From positions 153,606 to 217,605 of the IMG/VR virus record IMGVR_UViG_3300046543_000266: a DNA stretch of 64,000 nt. One strand, 5' to 3'. The notes under the pieces are model-generated. The model was not told the DNA's origin. It was given only the letters and a program-made list of their open reading frames with translations, and did not search any database. Shown one piece after another: positions 42,933-60,209 of the stretch (positions within the stretch are counted from its first letter, which is position 1; the number at the start of each line of letters is the position of its first letter). A program made the translations under genes and the position numbers.

Positions 42933-42953
42933 AAAGCCCCTGCAGAAGTTGTG

Positions 42954-43985: not shown

Positions 43986-44000
43986 AATATCCTCGTTGTG

Positions 44001-44029
44001 AAAAGGGCCTCCGGTTAAGGAGGCAGCCC
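44001..44029 (-). terminator. Hairpin + U4 between motif and RBS
   Basis: GGGCTGCCTCC/GGAGGCCC followed by TTTTCAC. Confidence 0.45.
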
Positions 44030-44039
44030 GATGTTTGCA

Positions 44040-44046
44040 TTAAATT
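44040..44046 (-). promoter_or_regulatory. AATTTAA motif
   Basis: Intergenic. Confidence 0.45.
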
Positions 44047-44070
44047 TGCCGACATGGGCTGCCTATCGGG

Positions 44071-44268
44071 TTAGAACTTCCCGAGTAGTACCAGAACGAG
44101 TACCACAGTCAACGCCGTTGTGAAGATGTAGAACGCAGAGTAGCCCCAGGACTTTGAGTACTTCCAACCCGGAAAGCTGACCACACTGCACAGCAGCAAC
44201 AGCAGGATGACGATCATATTAACTGACATGTGAAACCTCCTGTGAGATACTGCACAGTTAAATTCCAC
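44071..44268 (-). CDS. DUF3309-like small membrane protein
   Basis: ILLLLL...FPGWKYSKSWGY...VLVLVLLGKF. Real start probably the ATG near 44229. Confidence 0.65.
   Translation of the reverse strand: MEFNCAVSHRRFHMSVNMIVILLLLLCSVVSFPGWKYSKSWGYSAFYIFTTALTVVLVLVLLGKF
44258..44264 (-). promoter_or_regulatory. AATTTAA motif
   Basis: Upstream of the DUF3309-like gene. Confidence 0.4.
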
Positions 44269-44470
44269 ACGACCAGCTTGGGTGTTACTGGATGTTACAA
44301 CAGACAGACTGCGGTGTGCATACGCTGGAAATACTCAGCGTACGACTGTACGTCACCACGATCAGCCTCACGCCCAGCCTCACGTGCGTCCCGGCGACGA
44401 TCGTTCTTGACTTCGATATACGCCAAGAAGACGAGAGTGGGGTCGACATAACTGGATCTAAGCACGTTCA

Positions 44471-44881
44471 TTACTGTTCTCTGAAGTCAACGTCGTCTAC
44501 ATCGGCGTAGGTCAGACGCTTCGGTGGCTGGGATTGGCGGGTTGGTGGCAGAGCCGGTTGAACAACGCGTTCTACAGTGGGCTTCGCTTGCAGCACTTCC
44601 AGCCCCTGTAGACTGAACGACGGGTCGCTATCCGACGATCGGGAGCTGCTGAAACTGCTAGACCGCTTGATTGGCGTTAGACACTTGAGCCACAGCGACG
44701 GCCGCTCCTTGGTGCAGAAGCAGTCGCCGGGCAACACTTCGTGAAGCAGACGGTCGTCGAAGAACTGCCCGTTGCGGAAAATCTCCACGTCCTTGTCGTA
44801 TCGTCCCTGCCGCGCATCAGGTAGGGCGGGTAATTGCTCCACCGCGCCAGTCGAAGGCTGCAGAACTATGGACGTTGACAT
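44471..44881 (-). CDS. Hypothetical protein
   Basis: Start probably MSTSIVLQ at 44881. Confidence 0.55.
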   Translation of the reverse strand: MSTSIVLQPSTGAVEQLPALPDARQGRYDKDVEIFRNGQFFDDRLLHEVLPGDCFCTKERPSLWLKCLTPIKRSSSFSSSRSSDSDPSFSLQGLEVLQAKPTVERVVQPALPPTRQSQPPKRLTYADVDDVDFREQ

Positions 44882-45188
44882 TGGATGCTCCCATTGGTTG
44901 GGCGTGCCCCGGTTCCCTGTAGCCATTGTGCGGGAACCGGCGACGCATGTCAGTGAAGAAGGCGTCGATGAAGAACAGCAGTGGACTCAGATGCATGTCC
45001 GGTACATCGGGGAAGTTTACAGACACCCACTGACGATCGAGCTCCGCGGCTCGCAACTCGTCGTACGTGAATGTCTTCGACTCACCACGGCGCGGATTGA
45101 TGAACAGCGACGACTTGCCGATATGCGATGCACCGCTGATCTTCTCCGCAGTGTACCAGAAGCTCGAATTCCAACTGCTGTACGCCAT
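44817..45188 (-). CDS. Hypothetical protein
   Basis: RBS GGAG before MAYSSWN. Confidence 0.55.
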   Translation of the reverse strand: MAYSSWNSSFWYTAEKISGASHIGKSSLFINPRRGESKTFTYDELRAAELDRQWVSVNFPDVPDMHLSPLLFFIDAFFTDMRRRFPHNGYREPGHAQPMGASNVNVHSSAAFDWRGGAITRPT

Positions 45189-45219
45189 GATTATCTCCAC
45201 TTGATTTAGTTTGTGTTTA

Positions 45220-45501
45220 TTACAGGACAACGTTGTCCGGGTCGGTGTGCTCGTCGGCCCGCTGCTTCAGCTCCGGCCAGCGATGCGACATGTAGGTGCG
45301 CAGCCAGTTCGCGGCTTTGCGGTAGCCCGGATTGTGCGGCTCGCGGGCTGCTCCGTATCCGTCGGTGACTCCGTTGAGATACGCGTTTCGGATTGCCGAA
45401 ACACCGATGATTCCCAGCGTCAGAATTACGACTACCCCGCACAGCAGTTGCACATTCATGGTCTCACCTATTGATGGTTGGATTGTTTGTTTTGATACCA
45501 C
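45220..45501 (-). CDS. Small membrane protein
   Basis: Hydrophobic LLCGVVVILTLGIIGV segment. Confidence 0.6.
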   Translation of the reverse strand: MVSKQTIQPSIGETMNVQLLCGVVVILTLGIIGVSAIRNAYLNGVTDGYGAAREPHNPGYRKAANWLRTYMSHRWPELKQRADEHTDPDNVVL

Positions 45502-45505
45502 TGTT

Positions 45506-45513
45506 TATTTACT
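45506..45513 (-). promoter_or_regulatory. AGTAAATA motif
   Basis: Intergenic. Confidence 0.6.
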
Positions 45514-45592
45514 GTGACGGAGCAGGTCCAGAAAAGTCAAAAGGCACGCGACCCTTTCGAGTGGCGTGCCATTGTTCAGCTAGTTACGTCAA

Positions 45593-46693
45593 TCAGGACA
45601 ACGTGTTTGCGTCGTCGTTGCGTTGCGCGAAGTAGTCGCGAATCCCGTCACGCAACCCATGATTGTCACCGGTCAGTTGAAGCAACCCGTGTTCGTCATA
45701 GTAGACGTCGGTGTTAGGATCGTACTTGTTGTCCACCAGGATGGACCACCGCTCGACATATTTACGGCTTGATTTACGACCGTGCCAGTGATGCAGGATT
45801 GTGCCTTCCACAAATCCCAAGTCTCCGTTCACCACATGCTTCATTCGGTACAGCCGCGCAAGGGCTGCTTTCTGGTATGCTTTGGTGGTCCTGCCGTGGA
45901 TTCCCATATGAGCATGACCTACGAAGGCCCACGCCATGTGATGATCACCAGCACCTAGGATGGAAATGTCAAACAATCCACCACCTTGTTCCCACGTGTC
46001 TCGACGGATAGCCCATGCGTAGCCCGGATGCCACAGAGTAGCGTATCCACCGGCTTTACGCGCTTCGAGTCCGTACGTCTGATAGCAGTAGCCGAACGAC
46101 TCGACGACTGCATTCTTCGACTCACCGAACACGATGGGGCGACCCTGCGGATCCATGTCCAGCGCACGCGCCCACATCTGCACTACTTGGTGACGGTGCA
46201 GCTGAGTGATGGTGTCTTGAACGATGTTGCTGTTGAAGAAGTGAATGTCAGCGTCGATCCATGCCAGATACTTCACTTGGTCACCGTACAGCTTCACTGC
46301 GTTTGCGAAGGCAATGTTGGTGAGGTTCTCTTTGTGGAACAGTTCGTACTTGGTCCGCAGCTGGACGTGATGCGGATTGTCCGGGCTGGTGACTTCGAAT
46401 TCAGATTCGTTGAGCACCACTTCCACGACATGAAGTGTCACACCGAGATCTTCCATGTGCTTGACAAAGCGCTGGAAATTGGTGAGCAGGTTCTTGAAGT
46501 GTCGGTGGTTGAAATAGACGGCCGCAACGTGAAGGCGGGCGTTACCTTCTAACTTCTTGTGATGATGGTGACCGTGACTGCTGCGCGCGTGATGCGGGTG
46601 CGACGGTTTCTGTTGAACCGGTCGCGGCGCGTAGTAGCCTTGGGCGATGTGGTCTTTGATGAGTCTGGCGATTTTGGTGAGCCCGGAAAACAT
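45593..46693 (-). CDS. GT-A-fold glycosyltransferase-like protein
   Basis: FHKENLTN, LAWIDAD (DxD), HPGYAWA, ILGAGDHHMA, HHWHG. Confidence 0.65.
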   Translation of the reverse strand: MFSGLTKIARLIKDHIAQGYYAPRPVQQKPSHPHHARSSHGHHHHKKLEGNARLHVAAVYFNHRHFKNLLTNFQRFVKHMEDLGVTLHVVEVVLNESEFEVTSPDNPHHVQLRTKYELFHKENLTNIAFANAVKLYGDQVKYLAWIDADIHFFNSNIVQDTITQLHRHQVVQMWARALDMDPQGRPIVFGESKNAVVESFGYCYQTYGLEARKAGGYATLWHPGYAWAIRRDTWEQGGGLFDISILGAGDHHMAWAFVGHAHMGIHGRTTKAYQKAALARLYRMKHVVNGDLGFVEGTILHHWHGRKSSRKYVERWSILVDNKYDPNTDVYYDEHGLLQLTGDNHGLRDGIRDYFAQRNDDANTLS

Positions 46694-46783
46694 GCTGATC
46701 TCTGCGAGTTGGAGGTTAAGGTCTCATGACGAGGTATGTCCTAATAAGTGCAATGGAATTGTAAGCTTCCATTCCCAGATGTG

Positions 46784-46818
46784 AAAAGGGAGCAGCGACT
46801 GGTCCGTTCGCTGCTCCC
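46784..46818 (-). terminator. Hairpin + U4
   Basis: Perfect 11-bp GGGAGCAGCGA/TCGCTGCTCCC stem followed by TTTTCAC. Confidence 0.6.
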
Positions 46819-46850
46819 CCATGTTGTTATTCGTTATGTGAATTGTGGTA

Positions 46851-46857
46851 TTAAATT
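46851..46857 (-). promoter_or_regulatory. AATTTAA motif
   Basis: Intergenic. Confidence 0.45.
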
Positions 46858-46890
46858 GCGTAGCCTACCGCCTTCACACCAAACCCCAGT

Positions 46891-47175
46891 TCACAGCTGA
46901 CTATTGACGTCGCGTCGCAGCGCTTCCAGCTGGTTTGACACGCGACTGAGAACTTCGTAGCGAGCTAGTGCTTGCTTGGCTTTGATAAGTGCATCCAGTC
47001 GCTGGAAGTCGGCGAAGCTGTCCACACGCACTTCGTATCGCTCGCCGTTGACCTTCCACCACGCGATGCCGCGGCGATCGGCGATGTCTCCACTGCCGTC
47101 GAAACCGCTGGTGCTGATGTCGACTCGCTGAACTGGCGAGCTCGTCGGATACGGTGCGTAATGATCGCTGCTCAT
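46891..47175 (-). CDS. Hypothetical protein
   Basis: 94-aa ORF with RBS GAGG. Confidence 0.65.
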   Translation of the reverse strand: MSSDHYAPYPTSSPVQRVDISTSGFDGSGDIADRRGIAWWKVNGERYEVRVDSFADFQRLDALIKAKQALARYEVLSRVSNQLEALRRDVNSQL

Positions 47176-47194
47176 TTGTTCACCTCAATTGGTT

Positions 47195-47416
47195 TTATTG
47201 CCATGATCTATCCTTGAAACAGGCTGTGTACACTGCTCCGGCTATACGTAGGTCTTTGCTTTCAGTAGCCGAAGCCCATGCCATGACGCTGCATCCGGTC
47301 TCGACTGCTCGATTGTGGAAGTGCCGGTAAACGCGGTATCCCAAGTACGACACGACTATCGCGAGGGTGGCGATCATGAGCCAGTCAACGATACCGCGAT
47401 TAGGTCGACGACTCAC
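47195..47416 (-). CDS. Small membrane protein
   Basis: TM segment WLMIATLAIVVSYLGY. Confidence 0.6.
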   Translation of the reverse strand: MSRRPNRGIVDWLMIATLAIVVSYLGYRVYRHFHNRAVETGCSVMAWASATESKDLRIAGAVYTACFKDRSWQ

Positions 47417-47919
47417 TCAGGCACCCCGTACTTGGCGATCAGGTTCTTGAGGCGCGTGATGTCCTTACGCCGCTGCATAGCCTTGACCGGATCTTCCACC
47501 GGCGTCCGCGCCGTCTTGGGGCGCTCGTGCGCTTCGATTATCTGGCGAGGAACAACGCGAGCCTCGACGTTGTTGAATCCAGCGTCAGTGTATAGCACGG
47601 CATCGAAACCGTACTTGACGATGAGCTGGGCCAAGATTGTGCTGAGATCTTTCAGGGTGCCCTGGAAGTCGGACAGTTCCTGAATGCCCTCTGAAGGCAG
47701 ATCACGGATTTGGGTTGCTGACAGCTTCGTCGTGAGGTCCCCAGCTTCCGCGTGGCCTGACATCGAGACCCCAAGGTGGGGTACAACGTTGTAACCCGCG
47801 TCGAAGTATATAACTGACTGGGAACCGTGCTGTTCCTCGACACGACGCAGGGCAGCGATCATTTCACCGATCGTGAGGCTAGTAATCTGCGGTGGTAACA
47901 GTGTACGATTGGCGTTCAT
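47413..47919 (-). CDS. Hypothetical protein with internal repeat
   Basis: Two related YFDAGYNV / YTDAGFNNV segments; ATGA overlaps. Confidence 0.65.
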   Translation of the reverse strand: MNANRTLLPPQITSLTIGEMIAALRRVEEQHGSQSVIYFDAGYNVVPHLGVSMSGHAEAGDLTTKLSATQIRDLPSEGIQELSDFQGTLKDLSTILAQLIVKYGFDAVLYTDAGFNNVEARVVPRQIIEAHERPKTARTPVEDPVKAMQRRKDITRLKNLIAKYGVPE

Positions 47920-48290
47920 GCAAGCACCTTCTCGTCCTGATGCAGTGGAGGCCACTGATGCGACAAGACGGCGATGGCCGCAGCCTCGTTACAGAACACG
48001 CCGATCATGTCGTCTGTCAGCACGTACACATGGCCGTTCCACACATGCAGCGTCAGCATGACGTCACACGTGGACGGATCTTCAACCGTCTCGGGAACCG
48101 GCGTTGCCAAGATTGGTGTGGTGAACACTTTGTTGAACAGACTGGCTAGTTCCAGCGTGTTGTGACTGTTGCCAGCCAGCACGTTCGCCACGTCGGTTTG
48201 CAGCAGTCCGGCAGCGGCGCGCGCCGTATCCTGTTCGAACTCTTCCAGCATGTGGATGCCAACGAAGTGGCACTTTATATCTACAGACAT
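47916..48290 (-). CDS. Hypothetical protein
   Basis: 124-aa ORF in operon. Confidence 0.65.
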   Translation of the reverse strand: MSVDIKCHFVGIHMLEEFEQDTARAAAGLLQTDVANVLAGNSHNTLELASLFNKVFTTPILATPVPETVEDPSTCDVMLTLHVWNGHVYVLTDDMIGVFCNEAAAIAVLSHQWPPLHQDEKVLA

Positions 48291-48320
48291 TAGAACCTCG
48301 TGGGTTGATGGGTGTGTTGT

Positions 48321-48515
48321 TCACAAATCCAGGAACCGCTTGTAGAAAGCCTCGAACTCGCGTTCAAGATTCAGTATTAAACGGTCATAGGCGTCGGGCT
48401 TACCCTTTTGGAGCTTGCGCCGACGCCTGATATCTTCGAAGTCCCGGAGCATGGAGTTGTAGAACTCCGGGTCGAAGAACTCCTTGTTAGACAAGGTTTG
48501 TATTGGAGATTTCAT
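48321..48515 (-). CDS. Hypothetical protein
   Basis: 64-aa ORF. Confidence 0.55.
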   Translation of the reverse strand: MKSPIQTLSNKEFFDPEFYNSMLRDFEDIRRRRKLQKGKPDAYDRLILNLEREFEAFYKRFLDL

Positions 48516-48852
48516 GAAGCTTCGCTAGTGAGCCGAACTTATCGAAGTCCGGTTCGTCAGTCAAGGCACGCTGGCTATGAAGGTTGAAGCAGTGCCGGTC
48601 ACCGTGCATCTTGACGACGATGTTGAATGACTGAACCAGCACGTGAGGCTGATGGCCGGTGTAATACGGCGAATGAGTTGCACCCATTTGGATGATCTCG
48701 AACGCCGGATCCGACAGCAGATGTGAATCGCATAACTCACTGAGCTTCGTGAAGGCCTCGGCAGCCGCTTTCCGAGTAGTTACCTTTGCGATGACCTCAG
48801 ACACCTTCTGTCCAAGCGGGAAGGTGTGCTCGCGATACTTCAACATGCCCAT
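48487..48852 (-). CDS. Hypothetical protein
   Basis: 121-aa ORF. Confidence 0.6.
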   Translation of the reverse strand: MGMLKYREHTFPLGQKVSEVIAKVTTRKAAAEAFTKLSELCDSHLLSDPAFEIIQMGATHSPYYTGHQPHVLVQSFNIVVKMHGDRHCFNLHSQRALTDEPDFDKFGSLAKLHEISNTNLV

Positions 48853-48869
48853 GATGGTTAGTCTCGATA

Positions 48870-49458
48870 TGTTATGGTTTGATCAAACACATACTCCATT
48901 GCGATTAAGCAATGGGCTAGGTGCTTGTAATGCCGATCCGGAGGCGCGGTCGCGCGACAAGGCGCAGCGCCCCCGTAATCAGCGATTGGTCATAAGGAAG
49001 ATCGCGCGCACGCACAAGGAAGGAATTCGCGCGCAACCCAAGTCATAACAACCAATCTAGACAGCTAACTTCCGCTGGATCTGGACATCTAGCAACGACG
49101 CATAGCGATGACTCACAGTGCGACGATACGCCTAGAGACCGGACCAAGGCAGCGGCAACCTTCTCGTCGCGCAAAGGGCAGCAATTGCGACGGCCAAGTG
49201 GGGGTAACGACAGAGTCCCTTTCCCCATCCAACCTAGTCCTCGAACGGCGACGCGCACAAAGGCTAGGCTGGCTGAGGGCTGACGTTGGGCGCGGCACAT
49301 AGGCTGCGCGAATCAGCTTCAACTGCAAACGCGCGTTGCTCGCAGCGGCGCGAATGCTTTCTTGCAACTGATTGAGACCAGTTGCCAGTCCTCACCACTG
49401 CCGTTCATGAAGCAGCACGGCTGGACAGTGGTGGCCGAGTGGAGCCAGCCGTGCCCCC
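48870..49458 (-). ncRNA. Candidate ~600-nt structured non-coding RNA beginning with an H-type pseudoknot
   Basis: No protein-like ORF. Stem1 GCACGGCTGG/CCAGCCGTGC, stem2 CACCACTG/CAGTGGTG, further hairpins with G-U pairs consistent with the minus strand. Confidence 0.45.
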
Positions 49459-49466
49459 AACTCTTT

Positions 49467-49619
49467 TCACTTAGGTTCGTTCCAGAGCTTTTCTATAAGC
49501 CGAGTTTCTCGACGACGGATAATCCGTAGCAGAGTTTTCCGCCAGGATTTGGGACAGTCGTTGAGGTATTCGTTGCATCTGTTGCGAACCTTCATGTGAT
49601 GCTTGGATTTCGATTGCAT
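49467..49619 (-). CDS. Small basic protein (50 aa)
   Basis: RBS GGAG, MQSKSKHHMKVRNRCNEYL, read manually. Confidence 0.55.
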   Translation of the reverse strand: MQSKSKHHMKVRNRCNEYLNDCPKSWRKTLLRIIRRRETRLIEKLWNEPK

Positions 49620-49667
49620 GAGATATCTCCGTAGTGTACTAACACGGCATGATAACCTCCTATGCTT

Positions 49668-49675
49668 TATTTACT
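49668..49675 (-). promoter_or_regulatory. AGTAAATA motif
   Basis: Intergenic. Confidence 0.6.
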
Positions 49676-49689
49676 ATGCGGCGCTGACT

Positions 49690-49944
49690 TCACATGCGGG
49701 CGTAGGCTACGCTGTGAACGTATCGTGTATCGGGATTGCCCGCTACTTCGTAGTAGATCTCGTACCAGATGCGGCTGGCATCTTCGGTGACGTGGCACTT
49801 GATCACGTCCAGCACTTTGTGATGTGCCAGACCGTCTTGCGTCAGACAGGCACTGGATTTGGCCCAGCGACTATCGTCCGACGAAATCCTCTCCTTGGTG
49901 ATGAAGGGTGCCAGCGGCGACATTTCAGCTGCGTAGTGTCCCAT
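49690..49944 (-). CDS. Hypothetical protein
   Basis: 84-aa ORF. Confidence 0.55.
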   Translation of the reverse strand: MGHYAAEMSPLAPFITKERISSDDSRWAKSSACLTQDGLAHHKVLDVIKCHVTEDASRIWYEIYYEVAGNPDTRYVHSVAYARM

Positions 49945-49950
49945 GCGTGC

Positions 49951-50169
49951 TCACTTCGGAATCGTGCGGTTGACGGCTTCGCGGATGTCCACGCATTGCT
50001 TGCGGCCGACTTCGCGAATATCGAACTCGAGAGTTTCCGAGTGGTCGAGTTGCAGATTGCGATCCGACGTCACCAGGAAGCCTTTCTGCTTGAGGAAGTC
50101 TTCGAGCGCTTGGACAACCACCGACTTACCGACGCCGACAGGGCCTTCGACTGTGATCTTGATTGCCAT
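49951..50169 (-). CDS. Short P-loop (dTMP-kinase-like N-terminus) protein, 72 aa
   Basis: ITVEGPVGVGKS..VQALEDFLKQKG; no lid or NMP-binding region. Confidence 0.5.
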   Translation of the reverse strand: MAIKITVEGPVGVGKSVVVQALEDFLKQKGFLVTSDRNLQLDHSETLEFDIREVGRKQCVDIREAVNRTIPK

Positions 50170-50183
50170 GATTTCTCTGTTAG

Positions 50184-50268
50184 GGTGGGGCCATGCTACT
50201 CGATGACGGTTCAAACGCGGGACTCTTATTAGGAAAACCACACGTCATCGAATGCGTAGCACAGCCCC
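50184..50268 (-). ncRNA. Rod-shaped acceptor-stem RNA (array element D)
   Basis: 13-bp GGGGCTGTGCTAC/GTAGCATGGCCCC stem + ACC end, inner TCGATGAC/GTCATCGA and GGTT/AACC stems. Confidence 0.55.
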
Positions 50269-50274
50269 GGTGGA

Positions 50275-50357
50275 GGGTGGGACAGGTTGGAGTCGAACCA
50301 ACGACAGCGCAGATACTATTTCAACCCGCTGCTCTACCGGCTTGAGCTATCTGTCCC
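50275..50357 (-). tRNA. Atypical tRNA-Phe(GAA)-like RNA with 11-nt anticodon loop (array element C)
   Basis: Acceptor GGGACAG/CTGTCCC, D arm GCTC/GAGC, T arm GTTGG-TTCGACT-CCAAC, anticodon loop TTGAAATAGTA. Confidence 0.55.
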
Positions 50358-50364
50358 GATTGAT

Positions 50365-50493
50365 TGGAGGGAAGGCGAGGATTCGAACCCCGCTTCGCGC
50401 ATTAACCCGTAAGGGTGAGTTTGCACTTTCCGTTGCCCTACTACCAGACCGTCGCTATCGCTAGCATCGCGCACGGCCCAGATTCGGCTTCCC
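50365..50493 (-). ncRNA. tRNA-like RNA with encoded CCA and non-tRNA core (array element B)
   Basis: GGGAAG/CTTCCC-T-CCA, T arm GCGGGG-TTCGAAT-CCTCGC, ~90-nt core with GCTA-GCGA-TAGC and ACCC-TTAC-GGGT hairpins. Confidence 0.6.
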
Positions 50494-50501
50494 GTTGATT
50501 A

Positions 50502-50620
50502 AGGTGGGTGGTGGAGGGGATTGAACCCTCGACCTCGGACGTACCAAGAACCACCGCGAGACGCATCCGAAGATGTACGGGTTCAGGATTCCTTGCTCTA
50601 CCACCTGAGCTACACCACCC
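50502..50620 (-). ncRNA. tRNA-like RNA with ~40-nt structured insertion replacing the anticodon arm (array element A)
   Basis: 8-bp GGGTGGTG/CACCACCC, D arm GCTC-AGGTGGTA-GAGC, T arm GAGGG-TTCAATC-CCCTC, insertion with CATC-TTCG-GATG. Confidence 0.6.
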
Positions 50621-50627
50621 ATGTACT

Positions 50628-50834
50628 TTATTTACTGTCCGACATGATAAACGACACGCCAGTGAAACTACCGATCTCGCCACTGAGTAAGTGCTTGGCG
50701 TCCTCGGGAGTGATTTCCACACGCTTACCCATCTGCTCGAACCACGAGTTGTCGTCGGCAAAGAAGTACGTGTAGGTGTAGCGCCCGAGCCGCCGCTTCA
50801 ATCCTGCGTACAGCCGACGCCGGTGCTTACGCAT
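50628..50834 (-). CDS. Hypothetical protein
   Basis: Start MRKHRRRLY overlapping the upstream stop. Confidence 0.55.
   Translation of the reverse strand: MRKHRRRLYAGLKRRLGRYTYTYFFADDNSWFEQMGKRVEITPEDAKHLLSGEIGSFTGVSFIMSDSK
50629..50636 (-). promoter_or_regulatory. AGTAAATA motif driving the RNA array
   Basis: 8 nt upstream of the 5' G of element A; overlaps the upstream stop. Confidence 0.65.
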
Positions 50835-51157
50835 TCGGCGTGCCCTCTTGCGGTTCCGCACGCTTGATGGCGTCGTTAAGTTCGTCGCGCAATCCAGCAA
50901 GACCTTTCACATCAAGTCCTGCCGATGCCTGCCCATTCCATAGCATCAACGTCTCGATGAGGTCTTTGACAACGGTAGCGATTTGCTCGACACGATTCGT
51001 ATCCGTCGACGCACGCTTAGGAGCGTACACGAGCAGGTGTTGCCATGCTCGTGGGTCGACTTCAGGGGCGCCGTGACCGAGCCGGTCAACCAAGTCCATC
51101 ATTTCATCGCTGATCGATTTGGCGCGTTGCTCTTTAGTCGGCGCATTGAAGGTCATA
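50827..51157 (-). CDS. Hypothetical protein
   Basis: RBS GGAG before MTFNAPTKEQ; start position approximate. Confidence 0.55.
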
Positions 51158-51845
51158 GCTGCTCCTTCTTGCGACGCGCTGTCAGGATTTCCTTGGCGAT
51201 GGCGCCGCGCAGGATGCCGTAGTTGGGAACCGACTGCGAACCCCAATGGCCAGGACCGAGATTGTTGAAGTCCGGGTAAGCCAACGCTAGTGCGCGATCA
51301 GCAGCATCGAACGCATCGCGATGATCGCCGGCCTTTGAGACAACCGGGTTCAGATAGAAGGGCACTTCTTCGGCCGTCTGGCGGAACACGTTGGCGAGCA
51401 CCGGCTTATGTGCAGCAACGAACTCGGCGTCGTTCATACCCAACGATGCCGGATTCGCGTACAGATCAGCTTCCTGCGGTTCGGTCGGCGTCGAGCTTTC
51501 ACGCGCCAGCAGTTCGCGCAGGGGACAATCGGCTTCACGCAGGGGACCGCTGTAGCCATACTCGGCCAGCACACTGCGGATCCACGTGAGTTCTTCGAGG
51601 ACCGTGTTGACGTTCGGGTCGTTCTTGCCCGACAGTTTCTCGGCTTCCACCCGGTCATCACGACCACGGATGTTGGTGCCGTCACGCACGCCCTTGTCGT
51701 AGGCGGCTGCTTGACTGCCGTTCTCGGTGAACGGATTCGGGAACACACGGCGCTCGTACGACTTGCTGAAGCCGTCGTTGTACGCGAAGATGATCGCTTC
51801 CAGGTGAAGATCCTCAAGCGTGGGCCACTCTTTGTTGCTGCTCAT
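51153..51845 (-). CDS. Hypothetical protein
   Basis: 230-aa ORF. Confidence 0.7.
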   Translation of the reverse strand: MSSNKEWPTLEDLHLEAIIFAYNDGFSKSYERRVFPNPFTENGSQAAAYDKGVRDGTNIRGRDDRVEAEKLSGKNDPNVNTVLEELTWIRSVLAEYGYSGPLREADCPLRELLARESSTPTEPQEADLYANPASLGMNDAEFVAAHKPVLANVFRQTAEEVPFYLNPVVSKAGDHRDAFDAADRALALAYPDFNNLGPGHWGSQSVPNYGILRGAIAKEILTARRKKEQL

Positions 51846-52139
51846 TTAACACCCCGGAATGTTGGGAATAACGCGAATACCACCGAGACCGTGGTCTGGG
51901 TAGCGTAAGAAGATTGTCGGGTCAGCTTCGACTACGATCGTCCAGTAGGCGACTCGCTGTGCTCTATAGAGCTTGACCCAGAACGTGAATAGGTACATGG
52001 TGCTCCTCCAGTGGCCTATCGTTATCTTGCGGTAACTTCTGCGAGTTACTGGAAGTAGTGGGCGGCGATTGCAGCCAGCCCAACGACAATCACAAACTTG
52101 ATCTTGGTGCGCTGAACCCGTGCGTAGAACGCGGGTTCT

Positions 52140-52475
52140 TCAATCATACGTTCGAACACGTTGGCATAGAGATGATGTAGCATGGTCTTCCTCGGCCTCG
52201 TCCAGTTGTTCGCGGTACTGAACCAACCATCGCTTCTCTTGGATGGTCGGCGTCCAGCCCGCAGTGTTGTGTCGCTGATTGCCGCATCCCAAACAGGAAC
52301 ACAGCTGAGTAGTGTTTACTACTTGCCCCAGAATACGCGGCGGCATCTCCACAGGAGTTCGGGGCAGATCATCGAATGCTTGTTTGTAGCGGTTCGGCCA
52401 GCCCCAATAATGCTTGCGCTTATGCTTGAGTCGGGCGACGTGATGTCGGCGTACTGCACGGTTGAACTTGTCCAT
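52140..52475 (-). CDS. Hypothetical protein with CSCxxCGNxR motif
   Basis: LCSCLGCGNQRH. Confidence 0.65.
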   Translation of the reverse strand: MDKFNRAVRRHHVARLKHKRKHYWGWPNRYKQAFDDLPRTPVEMPPRILGQVVNTTQLCSCLGCGNQRHNTAGWTPTIQEKRWLVQYREQLDEAEEDHATSSLCQRVRTYD

Positions 52476-52583
52476 CTGTATTCCCCGGCCGTGCGCTGAC
52501 TGGTGGTCCAGTCATACCAACGCACGGCGTCTTAGGGTGATACAGCTTGGCGTACTGCGCAGACAACTCCATGGAGCGACGCA

Positions 52584-53102
52584 TCAAACGGTCGGCACCG
52601 TGGTTGTATCGCGCGTAGATTGCGGCGATGTTGATTGACATGGGCTTTGTTGAATTTTGTTGAACTGGAGGCCGAACTGATTTGCCACTTGCGACAGCCG
52701 ATCTTCCCATTCCCACGTACCGAAGATATCGTGTACGTTCTGCAGCACTGACAGGAGTTCGATTGTGCGGTCATCGTCAACGTTCACGTGTGCTGCCAGC
52801 AGACCATCCCGAAGTTGTTTGAGTCCCACAGTGTTGCCACTGTTCAGCGTCTGCGAGTGTTGCTTGCCATCTTTCAGGAAGGCCCGCAGATATCGGACAG
52901 GCAAGCCTTCCATGCGTGTGACGTGGAAGCGCGCCGGGATCAGGGCGCCGACCGGACAGCCTCCACCACCGAAGGAACGATACGCTCCACCGCCGGTTGG
53001 TAGGAGCTTGGCTTTCTGCTGGCTACGAAGATGAAGGACTGCACTGTCGAAGATCTGTTGGTGCGTCAGGAATGGCTTGCTGGATTTCACGGCGGTCTCC
53101 AA
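52584..53102 (-). CDS. Hypothetical phage protein
   Basis: AYR..GGGCPVGALIP and LQNVHD motifs. Confidence 0.65.
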   Translation of the reverse strand: METAVKSSKPFLTHQQIFDSAVLHLRSQQKAKLLPTGGGAYRSFGGGGCPVGALIPARFHVTRMEGLPVRYLRAFLKDGKQHSQTLNSGNTVGLKQLRDGLLAAHVNVDDDRTIELLSVLQNVHDIFGTWEWEDRLSQVANQFGLQFNKIQQSPCQSTSPQSTRDTTTVPTV

Positions 53103-53120
53103 CTGTCTAGTTAGAATTGT

Positions 53121-53330
53121 TTAACTGGCCTCGCGCTCGTCTACTTGACGCAGCGCTTCTTGCAGATCTGTCAGAAGTTGGTCCGCGTTCTCGCGGGTCA
53201 TAACGTACAGCATGGACCGGCCGTCTTGCGTCGGACACACAAGACGGATCATCGGGTTCTGGCCTATCGGCACGTTTGGTTGCACTTGAACTGCGACGCG
53301 CATCAGTTTGTCGTTTATCATCGGTGACAC
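53121..53330 (-). CDS. Hypothetical protein
   Basis: 69-aa ORF. Confidence 0.55.
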   Translation of the reverse strand: MSPMINDKLMRVAVQVQPNVPIGQNPMIRLVCPTQDGRSMLYVMTRENADQLLTDLQEALRQVDEREAS

Positions 53331-53406
53331 GGATTCCTCAGAGGGAAGTGATAACGGGTACTACCGCGATACAGCATCAAACTGTGGTGCGCTTAATCAG
53401 ACGCAA

Positions 53407-53721
53407 TTAGCTGTGGACTTCCCAGAGTTCCTTGCCGATTTCACCGGCCAGCCCGTAGTACGAATCCATGATAACGTAGTGCGCGACCTTGCCGATGTTC
53501 ATGGGGTCGTCGATAACGCAGTCATCAGGCTCGAAGCAGCGCAGCCGGTTCAGGAAGTCGTGGTAGAACTCGTGAACCGCAGGATCGATGACGCCCAGAT
53601 GTTCCATCAAGAACTCGTTTGGCTTGCCATCCTTGATGTGACCAACGAGGAATGCTTTGTACTTACCGAGCTCGAATGCTTCGTTGCGTTTATGGTTGAG
53701 TGCGTAAGTCAGAGTTGCCAT
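53407..53721 (-). CDS. Hypothetical protein
   Basis: Probable start MATLTYALN. Confidence 0.55.
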   Translation of the reverse strand: MATLTYALNHKRNEAFELGKYKAFLVGHIKDGKPNEFLMEHLGVIDPAVHEFYHDFLNRLRCFEPDDCVIDDPMNIGKVAHYVIMDSYYGLAGEIGKELWEVHS

Positions 53722-53909
53722 GCGATCACCACCGGAACAGGCTGCGATTGTTGTAGGGCTTGTCCAGCTGGACGTATCCGGCGTCACGCGTTTCGAACGT
53801 GCGATAACGGTAGCCTTCCGGGACATAGATAACGCTCCACACCGAAACACCACCGCGCGGAGCGTCTTTCCATTCAGAGAACTTGAGTGCCACGTGAACC
53901 TCAGGTTTG

Positions 53910-54425
53910 TTAGGCCATCACATCGTCGGGATCGAAGCCTTCGTCCATGCGCTTACGGCCGAAGGTCACCGGTTCTTGTGTGCGGCCCGTGTAGACCGGC
54001 GCTTGATGTTCGTGATCCGCGTTGCTCTGTGCCTCGACAGCTTCACGCACAGGCAACGACAGCACATTCTTGCCTACCACACCGTAGCGCAGGTGGAGCG
54101 GCTCGGCCACAGCCTTGTTGAGTGTGATGTCGGCTTCGATGGTGGACAGCCATGCCGGGTCGATTTGTCCCACCAGCTTCTGAATGTCGAATGCGAAGTG
54201 CTGCAAGATGGGGAGCGTCGTCGAGAACACCTGAACACGGCTGGACGTCGAGATACCCATGTTGGAGTTCGTGATCTCCAGGAACAGGCGCGTGGTGTTG
54301 GGCTTGACCTCGCCGTCGACCATCTGATCGATGCGGATCAGCGCGTAGCTGATGCTGCCGTTGTTGAAGTTTTGATGCGCGTCAGCTATGATGGTTTCCA
54401 GCTGCGAAGTGGCCTTGAGTTCCAT
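53910..54425 (-). CDS. Hypothetical protein
   Basis: RBS GGAG, 171 aa. Confidence 0.65.
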   Translation of the reverse strand: MELKATSQLETIIADAHQNFNNGSISYALIRIDQMVDGEVKPNTTRLFLEITNSNMGISTSSRVQVFSTTLPILQHFAFDIQKLVGQIDPAWLSTIEADITLNKAVAEPLHLRYGVVGKNVLSLPVREAVEAQSNADHEHQAPVYTGRTQEPVTFGRKRMDEGFDPDDVMA

Positions 54426-54569
54426 GATGTTCTCCAGTGTTTTGTTTGAATTCGAGTTGAAGCTGAAACTGATCGTCAGGTCAGAGGTCGCGGCACGGTT
54501 TCCAGTTGTCCCAGTTGTCCTGCTCGTTGCTTTCTACGATATAGGTCATGGCGATTCTCGGTTGGTCAG

Positions 54570-55277
54570 TCAATACTGCATGGTTGACGTGGTGTACATG
54601 GTGGTGAACATCGTCGGCTGCGGCTCGGCAGGGCATACGTACTCGGAGGCCATGCTGACAGCGTGTTCATGCACCGCTAGGTCCAGGGAGCTCAAGCTCA
54701 TGCGCTTGCGGCAAGTATCCAGCCGCTCTACCAGCATGATACCCAACGGCGATTCGGCAAACTCACCAGTCTTGCGGCTGAACTTACGTTGCAGGTACTC
54801 GTAGCGGCTGACTGCCCGCTGCAAGTTTGTCCGTGCCTCGTGGATCTGTTGGATCGTCTGGCGAAGCATGTCCTGCACGATAGCCACCGGTTCTTGCAGC
54901 CGGATGTCGAAGCGTGCGTCACCTTCGTTAGCCATCTGGTCGATGAGGTTGGTGAACGTTTGATTAACCAGATCGAGCGCCTTCGATTTCATCTGCTCGT
55001 CGGTGGGGCGGCGATATCCGACCGTATCGTAGAATTCCCGCATGGACACATCGCTGAGAACTTCATACGCTTCCTTGATTGCCTGGAAGCGCTTCTTGGC
55101 CTCGTCGGTGCCACCGTTGCGATCCGGGTGGAAGGCCATCGAAGCCTTGCGATACGCCCGGCGAATCTCGGTAGGCGTCGCCCCCTTATCCAGACCCAAG
55201 ACATCGTACAGGTCCGGAGCCTCGGGATCGAACAGGTCGTCTATGTCGAGCTCGGTTGTTACCATGGAGTTTGTCAT
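54570..55277 (-). CDS. J-domain (DnaJ-like) co-chaperone
   Basis: LYDVLGL...EIRRAYRK...FHPDRN...FQAIKEAYEVLSD, intact HPD. Confidence 0.9.
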   Translation of the reverse strand: MTNSMVTTELDIDDLFDPEAPDLYDVLGLDKGATPTEIRRAYRKASMAFHPDRNGGTDEAKKRFQAIKEAYEVLSDVSMREFYDTVGYRRPTDEQMKSKALDLVNQTFTNLIDQMANEGDARFDIRLQEPVAIVQDMLRQTIQQIHEARTNLQRAVSRYEYLQRKFSRKTGEFAESPLGIMLVERLDTCRKRMSLSSLDLAVHEHAVSMASEYVCPAEPQPTMFTTMYTTSTMQY

Positions 55278-55291
55278 TTATGAATTCGGTT

Positions 55292-55478
55292 TGTTGAAGT
55301 CGGCAGGAATCGAACCTGCTTCGCGGGGATCAATCCGCATCTATGCCAATCTAATACGACCCAAGCAATCCAGACCTGCGAGTCGGTTCACTGCATTTCC
55401 GTGGCGTTGTACGGACGACCCGATTCCTGTTGCATAGGTCAAACACATAGGTTCCGCACGCAGTGGTTATGTCTGGCA
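55292..55478 (-). ncRNA. Candidate ~185-nt RNA: multistem 5' domain + tRNA-like 3' domain
   Basis: Follows the AGTAAATA motif. CCAGAC/GTCTGG, CACTGC/GCAGTG and CCGT/ACGG stems, then GGGTCG/CGACTT acceptor and GCAGG-TTCGATT-CCTGC T arm. Confidence 0.55.
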
Positions 55479-55483
55479 CTTGG

Positions 55484-55491
55484 TATTTACT
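55484..55491 (-). promoter_or_regulatory. AGTAAATA motif
   Basis: Intergenic, directly upstream of the structured RNA. Confidence 0.6.
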
Positions 55492-55521
55492 GTGGTTGCC
55501 ATCGTCCGGTATTTGGTCCTT

Positions 55522-55881
55522 TTAGACGTCGGTATCCACAATAAACGGTTTGCACAAATGCGGTCCGCGTTTTCCGCACGCGTGACAAACTGGACCGCGG
55601 CGATTTGGCGAATCGGGACGTGTCGGAATCTTGGTGTAGTTGCCGGGTTTCAGACCAGCCGCAGGATTTATCGGCATCGCGTTTTCGATACCGCGCATCT
55701 GTTCACGAATCACGTTCGTCGTGTGTTCGCGCTCGGCAGCCAACGCTTCCTCGATTGCCGACACGAAGTGCTGGATGTACGGTCGAGTGCCTTCAGTGAG
55801 CGCCCTCGTCGCATGTTTGTTGGCAATCTGCAGTATCACTTCCTGCGGCAGGTGAAGATTCTTCGCGAATAGCATGCTCAT
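55522..55881 (-). CDS. Hypothetical protein with C-terminal Zn knuckle
   Basis: CHACGKRGPHLC. Confidence 0.6.
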   Translation of the reverse strand: MSMLFAKNLHLPQEVILQIANKHATRALTEGTRPYIQHFVSAIEEALAAEREHTTNVIREQMRGIENAMPINPAAGLKPGNYTKIPTRPDSPNRRGPVCHACGKRGPHLCKPFIVDTDV

Positions 55882-56419
55882 GGCGTTGGAATGTGTGTTG
55901 AGGTTCGTCTTGCGGGTCGCGACCTTGTTTCACAGGGTCGAGAACAACGTCGCTGTCTTCGTCAGCGTTGAGCCAGCCGCGTATCTCGATGTCCTGCCAC
56001 GCCTGACGCATGGTCACCAGTTCGGACTTGTCCATGAGTTTCAACGACATGCGACAGAACTCTTCCAGCTTGTCGATCAGCTCTTCGTCGATGATCCGGT
56101 CGTGGCGCACGGTGCGGAGCACGCTGAGGATGCTGTCGTTGTGGATGTCGGGATTGCTCGGATCGTCGAGTACATCTTGGCCGCGCCACACCTTCTTGAT
56201 GATTTCGGGCTTGCTGATAAGGCGCAGGTGCAACACGAACTGCGAGAAGTTCTGTAGCTTGTCGAGATCAGTCTCGTTGAGCTCACCGTTGCGAAGGTTC
56301 GTGATTGTTTCGACAACTCGGCGACGATACGTCTGCACGTAGTTGTAGTGTTGATGGAACAGTTGCGGGTCTCGATGCACACGCTTCTTCGTCGGGATCT
56401 TGGATCGATTCTTTGCCAT
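55793..56419 (-). CDS. Hypothetical protein with internal helical repeat
   Basis: LDKLQNFSQFVL / IDKLEEFCRMSL repeat. Confidence 0.6.
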   Translation of the reverse strand: MAKNRSKIPTKKRVHRDPQLFHQHYNYVQTYRRRVVETITNLRNGELNETDLDKLQNFSQFVLHLRLISKPEIIKKVWRGQDVLDDPSNPDIHNDSILSVLRTVRHDRIIDEELIDKLEEFCRMSLKLMDKSELVTMRQAWQDIEIRGWLNADEDSDVVLDPVKQGRDPQDEPQHTFQRHEHAIREESSPAAGSDTADCQQTCDEGAH

Positions 56420-56448
56420 GTCGGGTGTTCTTGAATGCTCCGTTGTGG

Positions 56449-56472
56449 AAAGGGGGAACCCGAAGGCTCCCC
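56449..56472 (-). terminator. UUCG-tetraloop hairpin + U3
   Basis: GGGGAGCC-TTCG-GGTTCCCC followed by CTTTCCAC. Confidence 0.5.
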
Positions 56473-56484
56473 GTGTGAACTACT

Positions 56485-57462
56485 TTACTCGGCGTCACCC
56501 CAGTCCGGATCGCGCTCGACGACGGCCGTCGGTTGTTTGATCACACCGTCTTCGGCGACCCACGGCTTGAGGTTGGCTTCGGCTTCCTCTTCGGCGATGC
56601 GCACGTCCAGCGGTTCGGCCGGTTCTTCGGTGAACTCCACGTCGGTAACGGCTTCGGCCGGCGATTCGTTGGCGAGCTCGACGGGCACCGCTTCGATCGA
56701 CCACGAGGCGCGCGTGCCGTTGTTGTCCGTGTAGTTGACATACGGTATGGACTGCGCTTGGTTGAGCTCGTCCTTCCCAACGAAGCGGAACACGTCGCCG
56801 ATCTTGAGTGCCAGGAATTCACCGGGCACGAAGTCCAGGTTGTTACCAGTCCAGATCTCGATCGGCTGCAGATTCGGCGACGGGTGCGGCAGCTTTTCAA
56901 ACAGCGACATGACGACGCCATGGAACAGGAAATCCTTCACGCGCTGTTCTTGCGGAAGGGCTTCGTAGGGAAGCATCGCCGGGTTGGTCTTGGCTTCCTC
57001 GTCCTTGACCTTGCCATATGTCCAGCCTTCCGCTTGCTTGGCTGCCATCCACGCTGCGTGTTGCTGTTCGGCAGTGGACGTCGGATTGCGCAGCTTGAAG
57101 ATCACGCCGTTGGTCATTGACTGCTTCTGCGCGTCGGACGCTTCGGCCCACGCGACGACGTCGTGACCGAGTGCCTTCAGGTACGACTGGTTGACTTCGT
57201 GCGCAACCTTCGCGATCGTCTCGATGTTGATGGTGCCCTGCACGTTGATGAAGCTGATCGGGTCGTCGTTCGTAACGATGATGTTGTAGCACTGGACATG
57301 ATCGCCGGTTGCCACGCTGACCGTCGGGTCGTTGTTGCGCAGAGCCGCGGCAAATCCTTCGGCGATGCGCGTGAGACTTTCGGTGTTGGGTTCGTTCGCC
57401 ACCTGAATGTGGAGAATGCGTTTTGCGTTGTGGATGGGTGTGCTGACTTGGACGTCGCTCAT
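56485..57462 (-). CDS. RyR-domain-containing protein
   Basis: IAKVAHEVN..Y...QHAAWMAAKQAEGWTYG.VKDEEAKTNPAMLPYEALPQEQRVKD. Confidence 0.8.
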   Translation of the reverse strand: MSDVQVSTPIHNAKRILHIQVANEPNTESLTRIAEGFAAALRNNDPTVSVATGDHVQCYNIIVTNDDPISFINVQGTINIETIAKVAHEVNQSYLKALGHDVVAWAEASDAQKQSMTNGVIFKLRNPTSTAEQQHAAWMAAKQAEGWTYGKVKDEEAKTNPAMLPYEALPQEQRVKDFLFHGVVMSLFEKLPHPSPNLQPIEIWTGNNLDFVPGEFLALKIGDVFRFVGKDELNQAQSIPYVNYTDNNGTRASWSIEAVPVELANESPAEAVTDVEFTEEPAEPLDVRIAEEEAEANLKPWVAEDGVIKQPTAVVERDPDWGDAE

Positions 57463-60034: not shown

Positions 60035-60175
60035 ATGAAAGCAGTCAAGAAGGTGCACACATCGCCCGACGAGTTTAACTCTGAGGGCTTCGACAAGGAC
60101 GGATTCCGACCTACCTACAGTGACGAGCGAACCAAAATCCGTGAGCGGGTACTACGTGAGCTGGCTAGTAAATAA
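60035..60175 (+). CDS. Small protein (46 aa)
   Basis: RBS GAGG, MKAVKKVHTSPDEF, read manually. Confidence 0.55.
   Translation: MKAVKKVHTSPDEFNSEGFDKDGFRPTYSDERTKIRERVLRELASK
60167..60174 (+). promoter_or_regulatory. AGTAAATA motif
   Basis: Overlaps a stop codon, upstream of DUF1653/Mre11 genes. Confidence 0.6.
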
Positions 60176-60209
60176 CACGGTCAACATACCTACACACCAA
60201 GGAGCCATC

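What the first reader, a model, noticed from the sequence alone, without database searches (positions are those of the whole stretch)
50184..50636. Promoter-driven tandem array of four acceptor-stem RNAs, none a canonical tRNA
Seen: AGTAAATA, then after 8 nt four elements separated by only ~6-8 nt. Each starts with GGG and ends in a paired stem plus NCC(N). A has D and T arms, but ~64 nt lie between them (about 23 in a normal tRNA), including a C(UUCG)G hairpin. B has a T arm and encoded CCA but a ~90-nt unrelated core. C is Phe-like with an 11-nt anticodon loop. D is a 13-bp + 8-bp rod with no T arm. Inference: the shared retention of the acceptor/T-arm face, which RNase P, CCA-adding enzyme, synthetases and EF-Tu read, together with a remodelled anticodon face, suggests selection rather than decay. 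They could be decoys for anticodon nucleases or tRNA-sensing defences, stringent-response modulators, or scaffolds for cargo RNA domains.
Basis: partly seen in the sequence, partly recalled or inferred. Interest (0 to 1): 0.82.

Follow-up and report, generated by a model that had tools for sequence, protein, structure and literature searches.

The report
Operon of tRNA-derived, non-decoding phage RNAs
A soil jumbo phage carries a small operon of four RNAs that keep the top half of a tRNA but have lost a normal anticodon loop; evolution has preserved their folds, so they are probably working tRNA look-alikes, though their job is untested.

Summary
On the minus strand (50620 to 50183), a recurring phage promoter-like motif precedes four closely spaced elements, each starting GGG and ending stem-N-CC. 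The window is a phiRSL1/BcepSauron-like jumbo phage from rhizosphere. Default ARAGORN finds no tRNA in 64 kb. Rfam scores A and C as tRNA only by skipping large or odd anticodon arms. I recovered three diverged relatives' arrays from public assemblies. Covariation supports A's acceptor, D and T stems and D's rod, so these are not decaying pseudogenes. The anticodon side is swapped between lineages: A's hairpin tip is replaced, C is Phe-like here and Pro-like elsewhere, and B is absent from one lineage. Best reading (about 0.4): a precursor cut by tRNA-maturation enzymes into non-decoding tRNA mimics. A decoy role against tRNA-directed defences is plausible but untested. The main rival is that A is an intron-bearing tRNA like the "enigmatic intron" tRNAs of Lak megaphages; at least 115 viral contigs carry similarly oversized tRNA genes. 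phiRSL1 itself has a tRNA-like gene with a 4-nt "anticodon" loop. No RNA data could be obtained.

The parts
50627..50636 (-). Promoter-like motif AGTAAATAAA, overlapping the last codons and stop of the upstream gene, 8 nt before element A
   Evidence: GTAAATAAA with up to 1 mismatch occurs 14 times against 3.9 expected. The copies follow gene orientation and mostly sit upstream of an RBS and start codon. The motif is conserved upstream of A in L003, L009, L011 and L012. The window has an orthologue, 58% identical, of the phiRSL1 protein annotated as a sigma factor.
50503..50620 (-). Element A: tRNA-like, with an 8-bp acceptor stem, D arm, T arm, tail ACC, and a long arm in place of the anticodon stem-loop
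   Evidence: Rfam tRNA scores 43.2 bits here and 49.1 bits in L003. Covariation is seen in the acceptor (2 pairs), D stem (1) and T stem (1). The elbow and core nucleotides (U8, A14, GG of the D loop, TTC.A of the T loop) are invariant.
50536..50593 (-). Extended arm or insert of A: stem (A/C)GGA/UCCG, internal loops, helix GAAC../..GUUC, and a lineage-specific apical hairpin (here C(UUCG)G)
   Evidence: The flanks AAUCCUGAAC and GGUUCUUGGUACGUCCGAGG are invariant in 4 lineages. The tip is replaced by an unrelated hairpin of about 40 nt in L003 and L009.
50365..50493 (-). Element B: acceptor stem, T arm and encoded CCA around a core of about 93 nt with two predicted hairpins
   Evidence: It is 95% identical in L003 and absent from the L009/L008/L010 lineage. 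It shows no covariation and matches no Rfam or tmRNA model.
50275..50357 (-). Element C: tRNA-Phe-derived body with an 11-nt anticodon loop and tail ACCC
   Evidence: Rfam scores 32.1 bits. blastn gives 74-79% identity to tRNA-Phe genes. The acceptor, D and T stems are 100% paired in 3 lineages, with one compensatory D-stem pair. The anticodon arm is replaced by a Pro(UGG)-like arm in L009.
50183..50268 (-). Element D: rod of 13 bp plus 9-10 bp with a conserved apical hairpin, a 3' bulge GUUUGAA and tail N-CC, 13 nt upstream of the next start codon
   Evidence: Fold z-score -6.4. Upper-stem pair 7 appears as G-C, C-G and U-A; lower-stem pairs 11 and 12 appear as UA/UG/CG and AU/GU/GC. RNAalifold finds 5 compensatory pairs.
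49951..50169 (-). Downstream gene: 72-aa P-loop protein, probably co-transcribed
   Evidence: It is conserved next to D in all relatives. No terminator-like site lies on this strand between the array and the gene.
50628..50834 (-). Upstream gene: 68-aa protein whose stop codon lies inside the promoter-like motif
   Evidence: Orthologues P0006 and P0007 flank the array in L003, L009, L011 and L012.

Best explanation
The array is a transcription unit of four tRNA-derived structured RNAs that no longer decode. SHOWN: a recurring phage promoter-like motif precedes it; the acceptor, D and T stems of A, the same stems of C, and the rod of D are kept by purifying selection with compensatory changes; every element ends stem-N-CC; and the anticodon side is non-canonical in every lineage seen and is exchanged modularly between lineages. 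INFERRED: the precursor is cut by host RNase P at each GGG 5' end; the 3' ends are trimmed and completed to CCA, as happens for phage T4 tRNAs that lack a full encoded CCA (my own knowledge); and this releases stable RNAs of about 83-130 nt that show the acceptor/T-arm/elbow/CCA face but cannot pair with codons. MOST SPECULATIVE: they act in trans as mimics that occupy proteins reading that face. The most attractive targets are host tRNA-directed defence effectors such as tail- or acceptor-directed nucleases and nucleotidyltransferase toxins, or anticodon-arm nucleases that dock on the tRNA body. D may additionally serve as a 5' cap-like hairpin for the downstream mRNA.
For: The relatives L003, L009/L008/L010 and L012/L011 carry the same array between the same genes. 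For A, 98.4% of pair cells are standard pairs against 44-54% when slid, with 4 double-sided changes, and only 1 of 500 shuffles reached the observed percentage paired or covariation score. D shows three Watson-Crick pair types at one position and G-U intermediates at two others, and has 5 compensatory pairs in the RNAalifold consensus. C's three stems are 100% paired, with a C-G to U-A switch in the D stem. The array core is about 94% identical between W and L003, against 82-93% for the flanking genes. The tertiary-core nucleotides of A are invariant. The promoter motif is enriched and conserved. No gene caller placed an ORF in the array in any relative. The cultured relative phiRSL1 also has a full cloverleaf with a 4-nt 'anticodon' loop between two normal tRNAs. 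[quoted passage not shown]
Against: There are no expression, processing or aminoacylation data, since no RNA run was listed. Only four closely related lineages are available, so the covariation counts are small and rest on related sequences. B has no covariation and is dispensable in one lineage. A keeps invariant 7-nt anticodon-loop-like strings at both borders of its insert (AUCCUGA or UCCUGAA, and UUGGUAC), a pattern that also fits conserved splice junctions. Other viral contigs have inserts placed directly after intact anticodon loops. phiRSL1 encodes an RtcB-type 'tRNA splicing ligase'. C in the L009 lineage is callable as tRNA-Pro(UGG). No defence system or host is identified.
Confidence: 0.4

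Rival explanations
1. A, and perhaps C, are real decoding tRNAs. A's 28-43-nt insert would be an intervening sequence removed by an unknown protein-dependent cut-and-ligate pathway, giving an Arg(CCU)-, Gln(CUG)- or Thr(GGU)-type tRNA. C would decode Phe here and Pro in the L009 lineage, despite an altered loop that might evade anticodon nucleases.
For: With introns allowed, ARAGORN models A as tRNA-Arg(CCU) with a 32-nt intron and C as tRNA-Phe(GAA) with 4 extra nt. The insert borders are invariant while the interior is replaced. L045 and L031 show complete U33-containing loops directly followed by 41-45-nt inserts. At least 115 viral contigs hold oversized tRNA-like genes. Lak megaphages have 'enigmatic' tRNA introns (PMC6784885). 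phiRSL1 encodes an RtcB-type ligase. Phage tRNAs are reported to carry anticodon-loop changes that evade nucleases (van den Berg 2023, cited).
Against: No junction choice gives a canonical tRNA. The acceptor stem has 8 bp, position 31-39 is A-G, canonical numbering gives C33, and in this window the first anticodon-stem pair is also A-G. By inspection there is no bulge-helix-bulge motif. The insert is far too short for a group I intron, and no intron family matched. No insert-free allele exists in 4 lineages. A 4-nt 'intron' in C has no known splicing route. B and D cannot be tRNAs at all.
Confidence: 0.22
2. The array is mainly a cis-acting processing and stability module ('tRNA punctuation'). 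RNase P and 3'-end processing at the tRNA-like units would separate the upstream and downstream messages, leaving the D rod as a protective 5' hairpin or regulatory leader for the P-loop gene. The released RNAs would be by-products.
For: The array lies between two same-strand genes, and no terminator-like site was found on that strand. D ends 13-18 nt before the start codon in every lineage. Only the faces read by processing enzymes are conserved. B is dispensable.
Against: A dedicated promoter-like motif sits directly before A, so no upstream message needs separating. One unit would suffice for punctuation, yet three or four different ones are kept. The base of A's arm and the apical motif of D are sequence-invariant beyond what processing needs. 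No comparable rods precede other genes in the window.
Confidence: 0.2
3. The elements are decaying tRNA pseudogenes left from an ancestral phage tRNA cluster and have no function.
For: A and C are clearly tRNA-derived. phiRSL1 has a small tRNA cluster on the same strand in a similar genome region, including a defective member. The array sits in a variable ORFan region.
Against: Compensatory changes keep the stems paired in A, C and D. The array is at least as conserved as the flanking genes. The non-canonical state is shared by all lineages, and the promoter motif and N-CC tails are retained.
Confidence: 0.05

Closest known systems
RNA species I and II (rnaC, rnaD) in the phage T4 tRNA gene region
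   Same: They are non-tRNA stable RNAs encoded within a phage tRNA cluster. Their presence in the T4 tRNA region map is stated in PMC2330249. From my own knowledge, they are co-processed with the tRNAs, have paired termini and have no known function.
   Different: In T4 they accompany eight working tRNAs, whereas here no canonical tRNA is present. No sequence relationship was tested. Here two members keep full D and T arms.
'Enigmatic' introns in Lak megaphage tRNA genes (Devoto et al. 2019, PMC6784885)
   Same: These are oversized phage tRNA genes recognised only when introns are allowed, with inserts conserved across genomes and an unknown splicing mechanism. Element A is the same size class as other oversized viral tRNA genes.
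   Different: The Lak cases resolve to identifiable tRNAs, and alleles with and without the insert exist. A has no insert-free allele, its tip is swapped between lineages, and removing the insert does not give a canonical tRNA.
phiRSL1 'RNA2' tRNA-like pseudogene (L131:36389-36460, minus strand)
   Same: It belongs to the same phage lineage. It has intact acceptor, D and T arms, with the anticodon loop replaced by a 4-nt loop, and it sits in a same-strand RNA cluster.
   Different: It is flanked by two canonical tRNAs (Pro-UGG and Gly-UCC), has no detectable sequence homology to A-D, lies at a different genomic position, and its conservation was not tested.
tmRNA tRNA-like domain
   Same: B has an acceptor stem, a T arm and CCA, with no anticodon arm and a large inserted core.
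   Different: B has G3-C70 rather than G3-U70, shows no pseudoknots, has no credible tag reading frame, and is not found by ARAGORN in tmRNA mode or by Rfam.
Murine gammaherpesvirus 68 tRNA-like (vtRNA/TMER) array (my own knowledge; not checked in a paper here)
   Same: It is a viral cluster of tRNA-like RNAs processed by host tRNA enzymes, given CCA but not aminoacylated, with attached hairpins.
   Different: It is a eukaryotic Pol III system, the hairpins are pre-miRNAs 3' of the tRNA-like unit, and the sequences are unrelated.

Membership tests
Canonical tRNA (Rfam RF00005 / ARAGORN) | Score above the family threshold | tested here: met
   A scores 43.2 bits and C 32.1 bits against a gathering score of 29. 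B and D have no match.
Canonical tRNA (Rfam RF00005 / ARAGORN) | 5-bp anticodon stem closing a 7-nt loop with U33 | tested here: not met
   A has 50 nt skipped in the arm and C has an 11-nt loop. Default ARAGORN finds 0 genes in the window. In L009, C has a 7-nt loop but with C33 and a U-C mismatch at positions 31-39.
Canonical tRNA (Rfam RF00005 / ARAGORN) | 7-bp acceptor stem followed by two nucleotides before the D stem | tested here: not met
   A has 8 continuous acceptor pairs, and C has 7 pairs plus a 3-nt connector.
Intron-bearing tRNA (archaeal bulge-helix-bulge type or bacterial group I type) | Bulge-helix-bulge at the junctions, or a group I intron fold | tested here: not met
   Reading the invariant flanks by eye gives a 2x4 or 3-nt-bulge arrangement with 2-3 bp, not two 3-nt bulges around 4 bp. 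The insert is only 28-43 nt, and no intron family matched at E<=10.
Intron-bearing tRNA (Lak-phage 'enigmatic' type) | Removing the insert yields a normal tRNA, and insert-free alleles exist | tested here: inconclusive
   ARAGORN can force an Arg(CCU) model, but every junction leaves non-canonical features. No insert-free allele was found in 4 lineages. Splicing itself is not testable here.
tmRNA | G3-U70 alanine identity pair, tag reading frame, pseudoknots | tested here: not met
   B has G3-C70. ARAGORN in tmRNA mode finds nothing. The Rfam permuted-tmRNA match scores 12.4 bits against 47 and spans several elements.
YrlA / bacterial Y RNA-like | Rfam RF02553 score and the permuted T-arm/D-arm module closed by a Ro-binding helix | tested here: not met
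   The match scores 16.2 bits against a gathering score of 69. It simply joins B's T arm to C's D arm.
mascRNA-like tRNA mimic | Rfam RF01684 score | tested here: not met
   The matches score 23.6 and 13.9 bits against a gathering score of 42.5.
T4-type stable RNAs of a phage tRNA operon | Co-transcription with tRNA-type units and release by RNase P and 3' processing | not testable with these tools
   No RNA run was listed. Only the gene arrangement and the stem-N-CC ends are consistent.

The most novel reading that the evidence does not exclude
The four RNAs are a dedicated RNA-based counter-defence. They would be non-decoding tRNA top-half mimics, matured by host tRNA enzymes, that titrate or misdirect host immune effectors recognising the acceptor stem, T arm and CCA tail (Cas12a3-like tail nucleases, AbiEii/MenT-type nucleotidyltransferases) or docking on the tRNA body before cutting the anticodon arm. 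The fast, modular replacement of the anticodon side would then record an arms race.
Probability: 0.13. Interest if true: 0.85.

Novelty: new variant of a known kind. Interest (0 to 1): 0.6.

Why it matters
Phage tRNA genes are usually explained by codon supply or by replacing tRNAs cut by host defences. Here a phage lineage keeps a promoter-driven set of tRNA-shaped RNAs that apparently cannot decode, and selection acts on exactly the surfaces read by tRNA-processing enzymes and by some defence nucleases. If they are mimics, they would be an RNA answer to defences that attack the universal end of tRNAs, for which the authors of the Cas12a3 study state that viral means of resistance are yet unknown. 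If instead A is spliced, it would help explain the unexplained short inserts seen in many large-phage tRNA genes. Either way, the phiRSL1 group includes cultured phages, so the question can be tested at the bench.

Tried and rejected
- RNA evidence: no RNA run was listed for the array, so processing could not be tested.
- Close relatives in deposited phages: none by megablast or blastn, and the flanking proteins have no tblastn hit.
- IMG/VR and JGI contig scans with conserved 20-30-nt blocks returned only the window's own contig or nothing. The relatives came only through protein look-ups in Logan, ENA and JGI assemblies.
- tmRNA reading of B: rejected (G3-C70).
- YrlA, mascRNA and permuted-tmRNA weak hits: rejected, because they score far below threshold or span neighbouring elements.
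- Stop-codon readthrough linking the array to the 72-aa and 84-aa ORFs: they are in frame only in W and L012, not in L003 or L008, so rejected.
- A T4-like Pnkp as RNA-repair context: the kinase-type Pfam hits belong to the APS kinase ORF. The HAD_PNKP hit was not located, so this is not used.
- D as a generic 5'-UTR hairpin: no similar rods were found elsewhere in the window.
- Protein-coding reading of the array: no gene was called there in any relative, and the indels are not multiples of three.
- The script machine was lost, so the 115 oversized viral tRNA loci were only sampled.

Full report
WHAT THE WINDOW IS. The window is the last 64 kb of IMG/VR contig UViG_3300046543_000266 (217.6 kb). 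It is a tailed jumbo phage with terminase, portal, a family A DNA polymerase and a Dda-like helicase. Its portal is 64-66% identical to those of Ralstonia phage phiRSL1 and Burkholderia phages BcepSauron and BcepSaruman. Gene order matches phiRSL1 from the portal to the DNA polymerase. The DNA is present in many rhizosphere and soil metagenome runs.

CHECK OF THE OBSERVATION. AGTAAATA is followed by 8 nt and then four elements (A 50620-50503, B 50493-50365, C 50357-50275, D 50268-50183) separated by 9, 7 and 6 nt. Each starts GGG and ends stem-N-CC(N). Default ARAGORN finds no tRNA in the whole window. The Rfam tRNA model passes its threshold for A (43.2 bits) and C (32.1 bits) only by skipping 50 and 17 nt in the anticodon arm. 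B and D match nothing. With introns allowed, ARAGORN forces A into tRNA-Arg(CCU) with a 32-nt intron and a long variable arm, and C into tRNA-Phe(GAA) with 4 extra nt. D is an exceptionally stable rod (z = -6.4).

PROMOTER. GTAAATAAA with up to one mismatch occurs 14 times in the window against 3.9 expected, and none of 100 shuffles reached 14. The copies follow gene orientation, and most lie upstream of an RBS and start codon, including the copy before the DNA polymerase gene. The motif is conserved directly upstream of A in all relatives, although it overlaps the stop codon of the upstream gene. The window has an orthologue, 58% identical, of the phiRSL1 protein annotated as an RNA polymerase sigma factor. 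The sigma-70 scan finds nothing here. The core TAAATA resembles the T4 late-promoter box; that comparison is from my own knowledge and was not tested. No terminator-like site lies between the array and the downstream 72-aa P-loop gene.

RELATIVES. No deposited phage or IMG/VR contig other than the source holds the array. Laying contigs from soil runs on the region revealed a diverged relative. The array core aligned at about 94% and the flanks at 82-93%. The 5' half of A and the 3' side of D aligned as 'replaced'. Protein look-ups of three flanking genes then gave the DNA itself. L003 carries A-B-C-D. L009, L008 and L010 carry A-C-D with no B. L012 and L011 are near the window but have a different D arm in A. 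No gene caller placed an ORF in the array in any of them.

SELECTION ON STRUCTURE.
- Element A. On the four-lineage alignment, 98.4% of pair cells are standard pairs, against 44-54% when the partners are slid. Four pairs changed on both sides: acceptor positions 4 and 7, one D-stem pair and one T-stem pair. U8, A14, the GG of the D loop and TTC.A of the T loop are invariant, so an L-shaped tRNA core is likely.
- Element D. One upper-stem pair appears as G-C, C-G and U-A. Two lower-stem pairs run UA/UG/CG and AU/GU/GC. An independent RNAalifold consensus has 5 compensatory pairs.
- Element C. The acceptor, D and T stems are 100% paired, with one C-G to U-A switch.
- Element B. There is too little variation to judge: no double-sided changes, and 3 of 4 in-helix substitutions keep the pairing.
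These counts rest on few and related sequences, but they argue clearly against decay.

THE ANTICODON SIDE IS MODULAR.
- In A, the arm base is sequence-invariant: (A/C)GGA/UCCG, then AAUCCUGAAC opposite GGUUCUUGGUACG. The tip is a UUCG hairpin in W and L012, and an unrelated hairpin of about 40 nt closed by GCGAG/CUCGC in L003 and L009.
- C keeps one body, but its arm is Phe-like with an 11-nt loop in W and L003. In L009 it is Pro(UGG)-like with C33, a 31-39 mismatch and a 9-nt variable region, and default ARAGORN calls that version tRNA-Pro.
- B is missing from one lineage.
- C's nearest matches are genuine tRNA-Phe genes. A's 3' block weakly resembles the anticodon-loop-to-T-arm stretch of phage tRNA-Thr and tRNA-His genes. 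Both elements are therefore tRNA-derived.

CONTEXT FROM OTHER PHAGES.
- phiRSL1 has, on the same strand just past its DNA polymerase gene, tRNA-Pro(UGG), an unannotated full cloverleaf whose anticodon stem is capped by 4 nt (ARAGORN: 'tRNA-???', 2-nt anticodon), and tRNA-Gly(UCC). It also encodes an RtcB-type 'tRNA splicing ligase'.
In a sample of ten, seven held elements of 96-122 nt that Rfam scores as tRNA. Default ARAGORN missed six of these and called the seventh only as 'tRNA-???'.
- Their inserts are unrelated to A's. In at least L045 and L031, the insert follows a complete U33-containing loop.
- Devoto et al. described such 'enigmatic introns' in Lak megaphage tRNAs.

MECHANISM. I favour, at about 0.4, a precursor matured by RNase P and 3' trimming plus CCA completion into non-decoding tRNA mimics. 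The structural conservation is shown; the processing and the trans-acting role are inferred. [quoted passage not shown] Its authors note that viral tRNAs cannot readily evade it. [quoted passage not shown]

RIVALS.
- A, and perhaps C, is a spliced or otherwise decoding tRNA (0.22).
- The array is a cis-acting processing and stability module for the downstream message (0.2).
- The elements are decaying pseudogenes (0.05).

LIMITS. There are no RNA data. Only four lineages are available. The script machine was lost. The other 153 kb of the contig were not examined.

Noticed in passing
window, 14 sites (e.g. 39052-39060 -, 21039-21047 -, 57892-57900 +, 60168-60176 +): GTAAATAA(R) is an over-represented motif that follows gene strand and mostly lies upstream of an RBS and start codon. 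It is probably a phage-specific promoter element; the window has an orthologue of the phiRSL1 protein annotated as a sigma factor at 16863-17834 (-).
   Followed up: partly
window 31680-31753 (-): One copy of the promoter-like motif is followed within about 20 nt by a GC-rich hairpin (GCCCGGCC...GGGTCGGGC) and a T run. This could be a short standalone RNA or an attenuator upstream of ORF 30635-31720.
   Followed up: no
window 19901-29227 (-): A DNA hypermodification gene cluster: a thymidylate-synthase-like gene, a 5-hmdU DNA kinase (21067-22149), three TET-associated glycosyltransferases, a sulfotransferase and an APS kinase (28523-29227). It is syntenic with phiRSL1 ORF230-238 and hints at glycosylated and possibly sulfated thymidine derivatives.
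   Followed up: partly
window 49690-50169 (-): The 72-aa P-loop ORF and the next 84-aa ORF are in the same frame, separated by UGA plus two codons. This holds in the window and L012 but not in L003 or L008, so conserved readthrough is unlikely.
   Followed up: yes
L131:36389-36528 (-) (phiRSL1 186389-186528): Between phiRSL1 tRNA-Pro and tRNA-Gly lie an unannotated cloverleaf with a 4-nt 'anticodon' loop and, 5' of it, a stable hairpin (z = -3.15). Neither is annotated in the record.
   Followed up: partly
L013:4857-4977 and L021:11580-11700 (IMG/VR contigs): Two oversized tRNA-like genes carry a second T-arm-like string (GGTTCGAGTCC) inside their insert, recalling the Lak-phage report of an intron that may itself encode a tRNA.
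   Followed up: no
Whether the window's own phage has one could not be determined.
   Followed up: partly
L003:465-491: The A-B spacer is 27 nt in L003 against 9 nt in the window. The extra 18 nt repeat the AUCAA(U)C-like spacer motif that precedes most elements, which may be a processing-site signal.
   Followed up: no
window 42351-57462: The array lies in a stretch of about 15 kb made mostly of ORFans with no PHROG family. The stretch also holds DnaJ-, RyR-, DUF3309- and DUF1653-domain proteins and appears to be a variable accessory region of the genome.
   Followed up: partly
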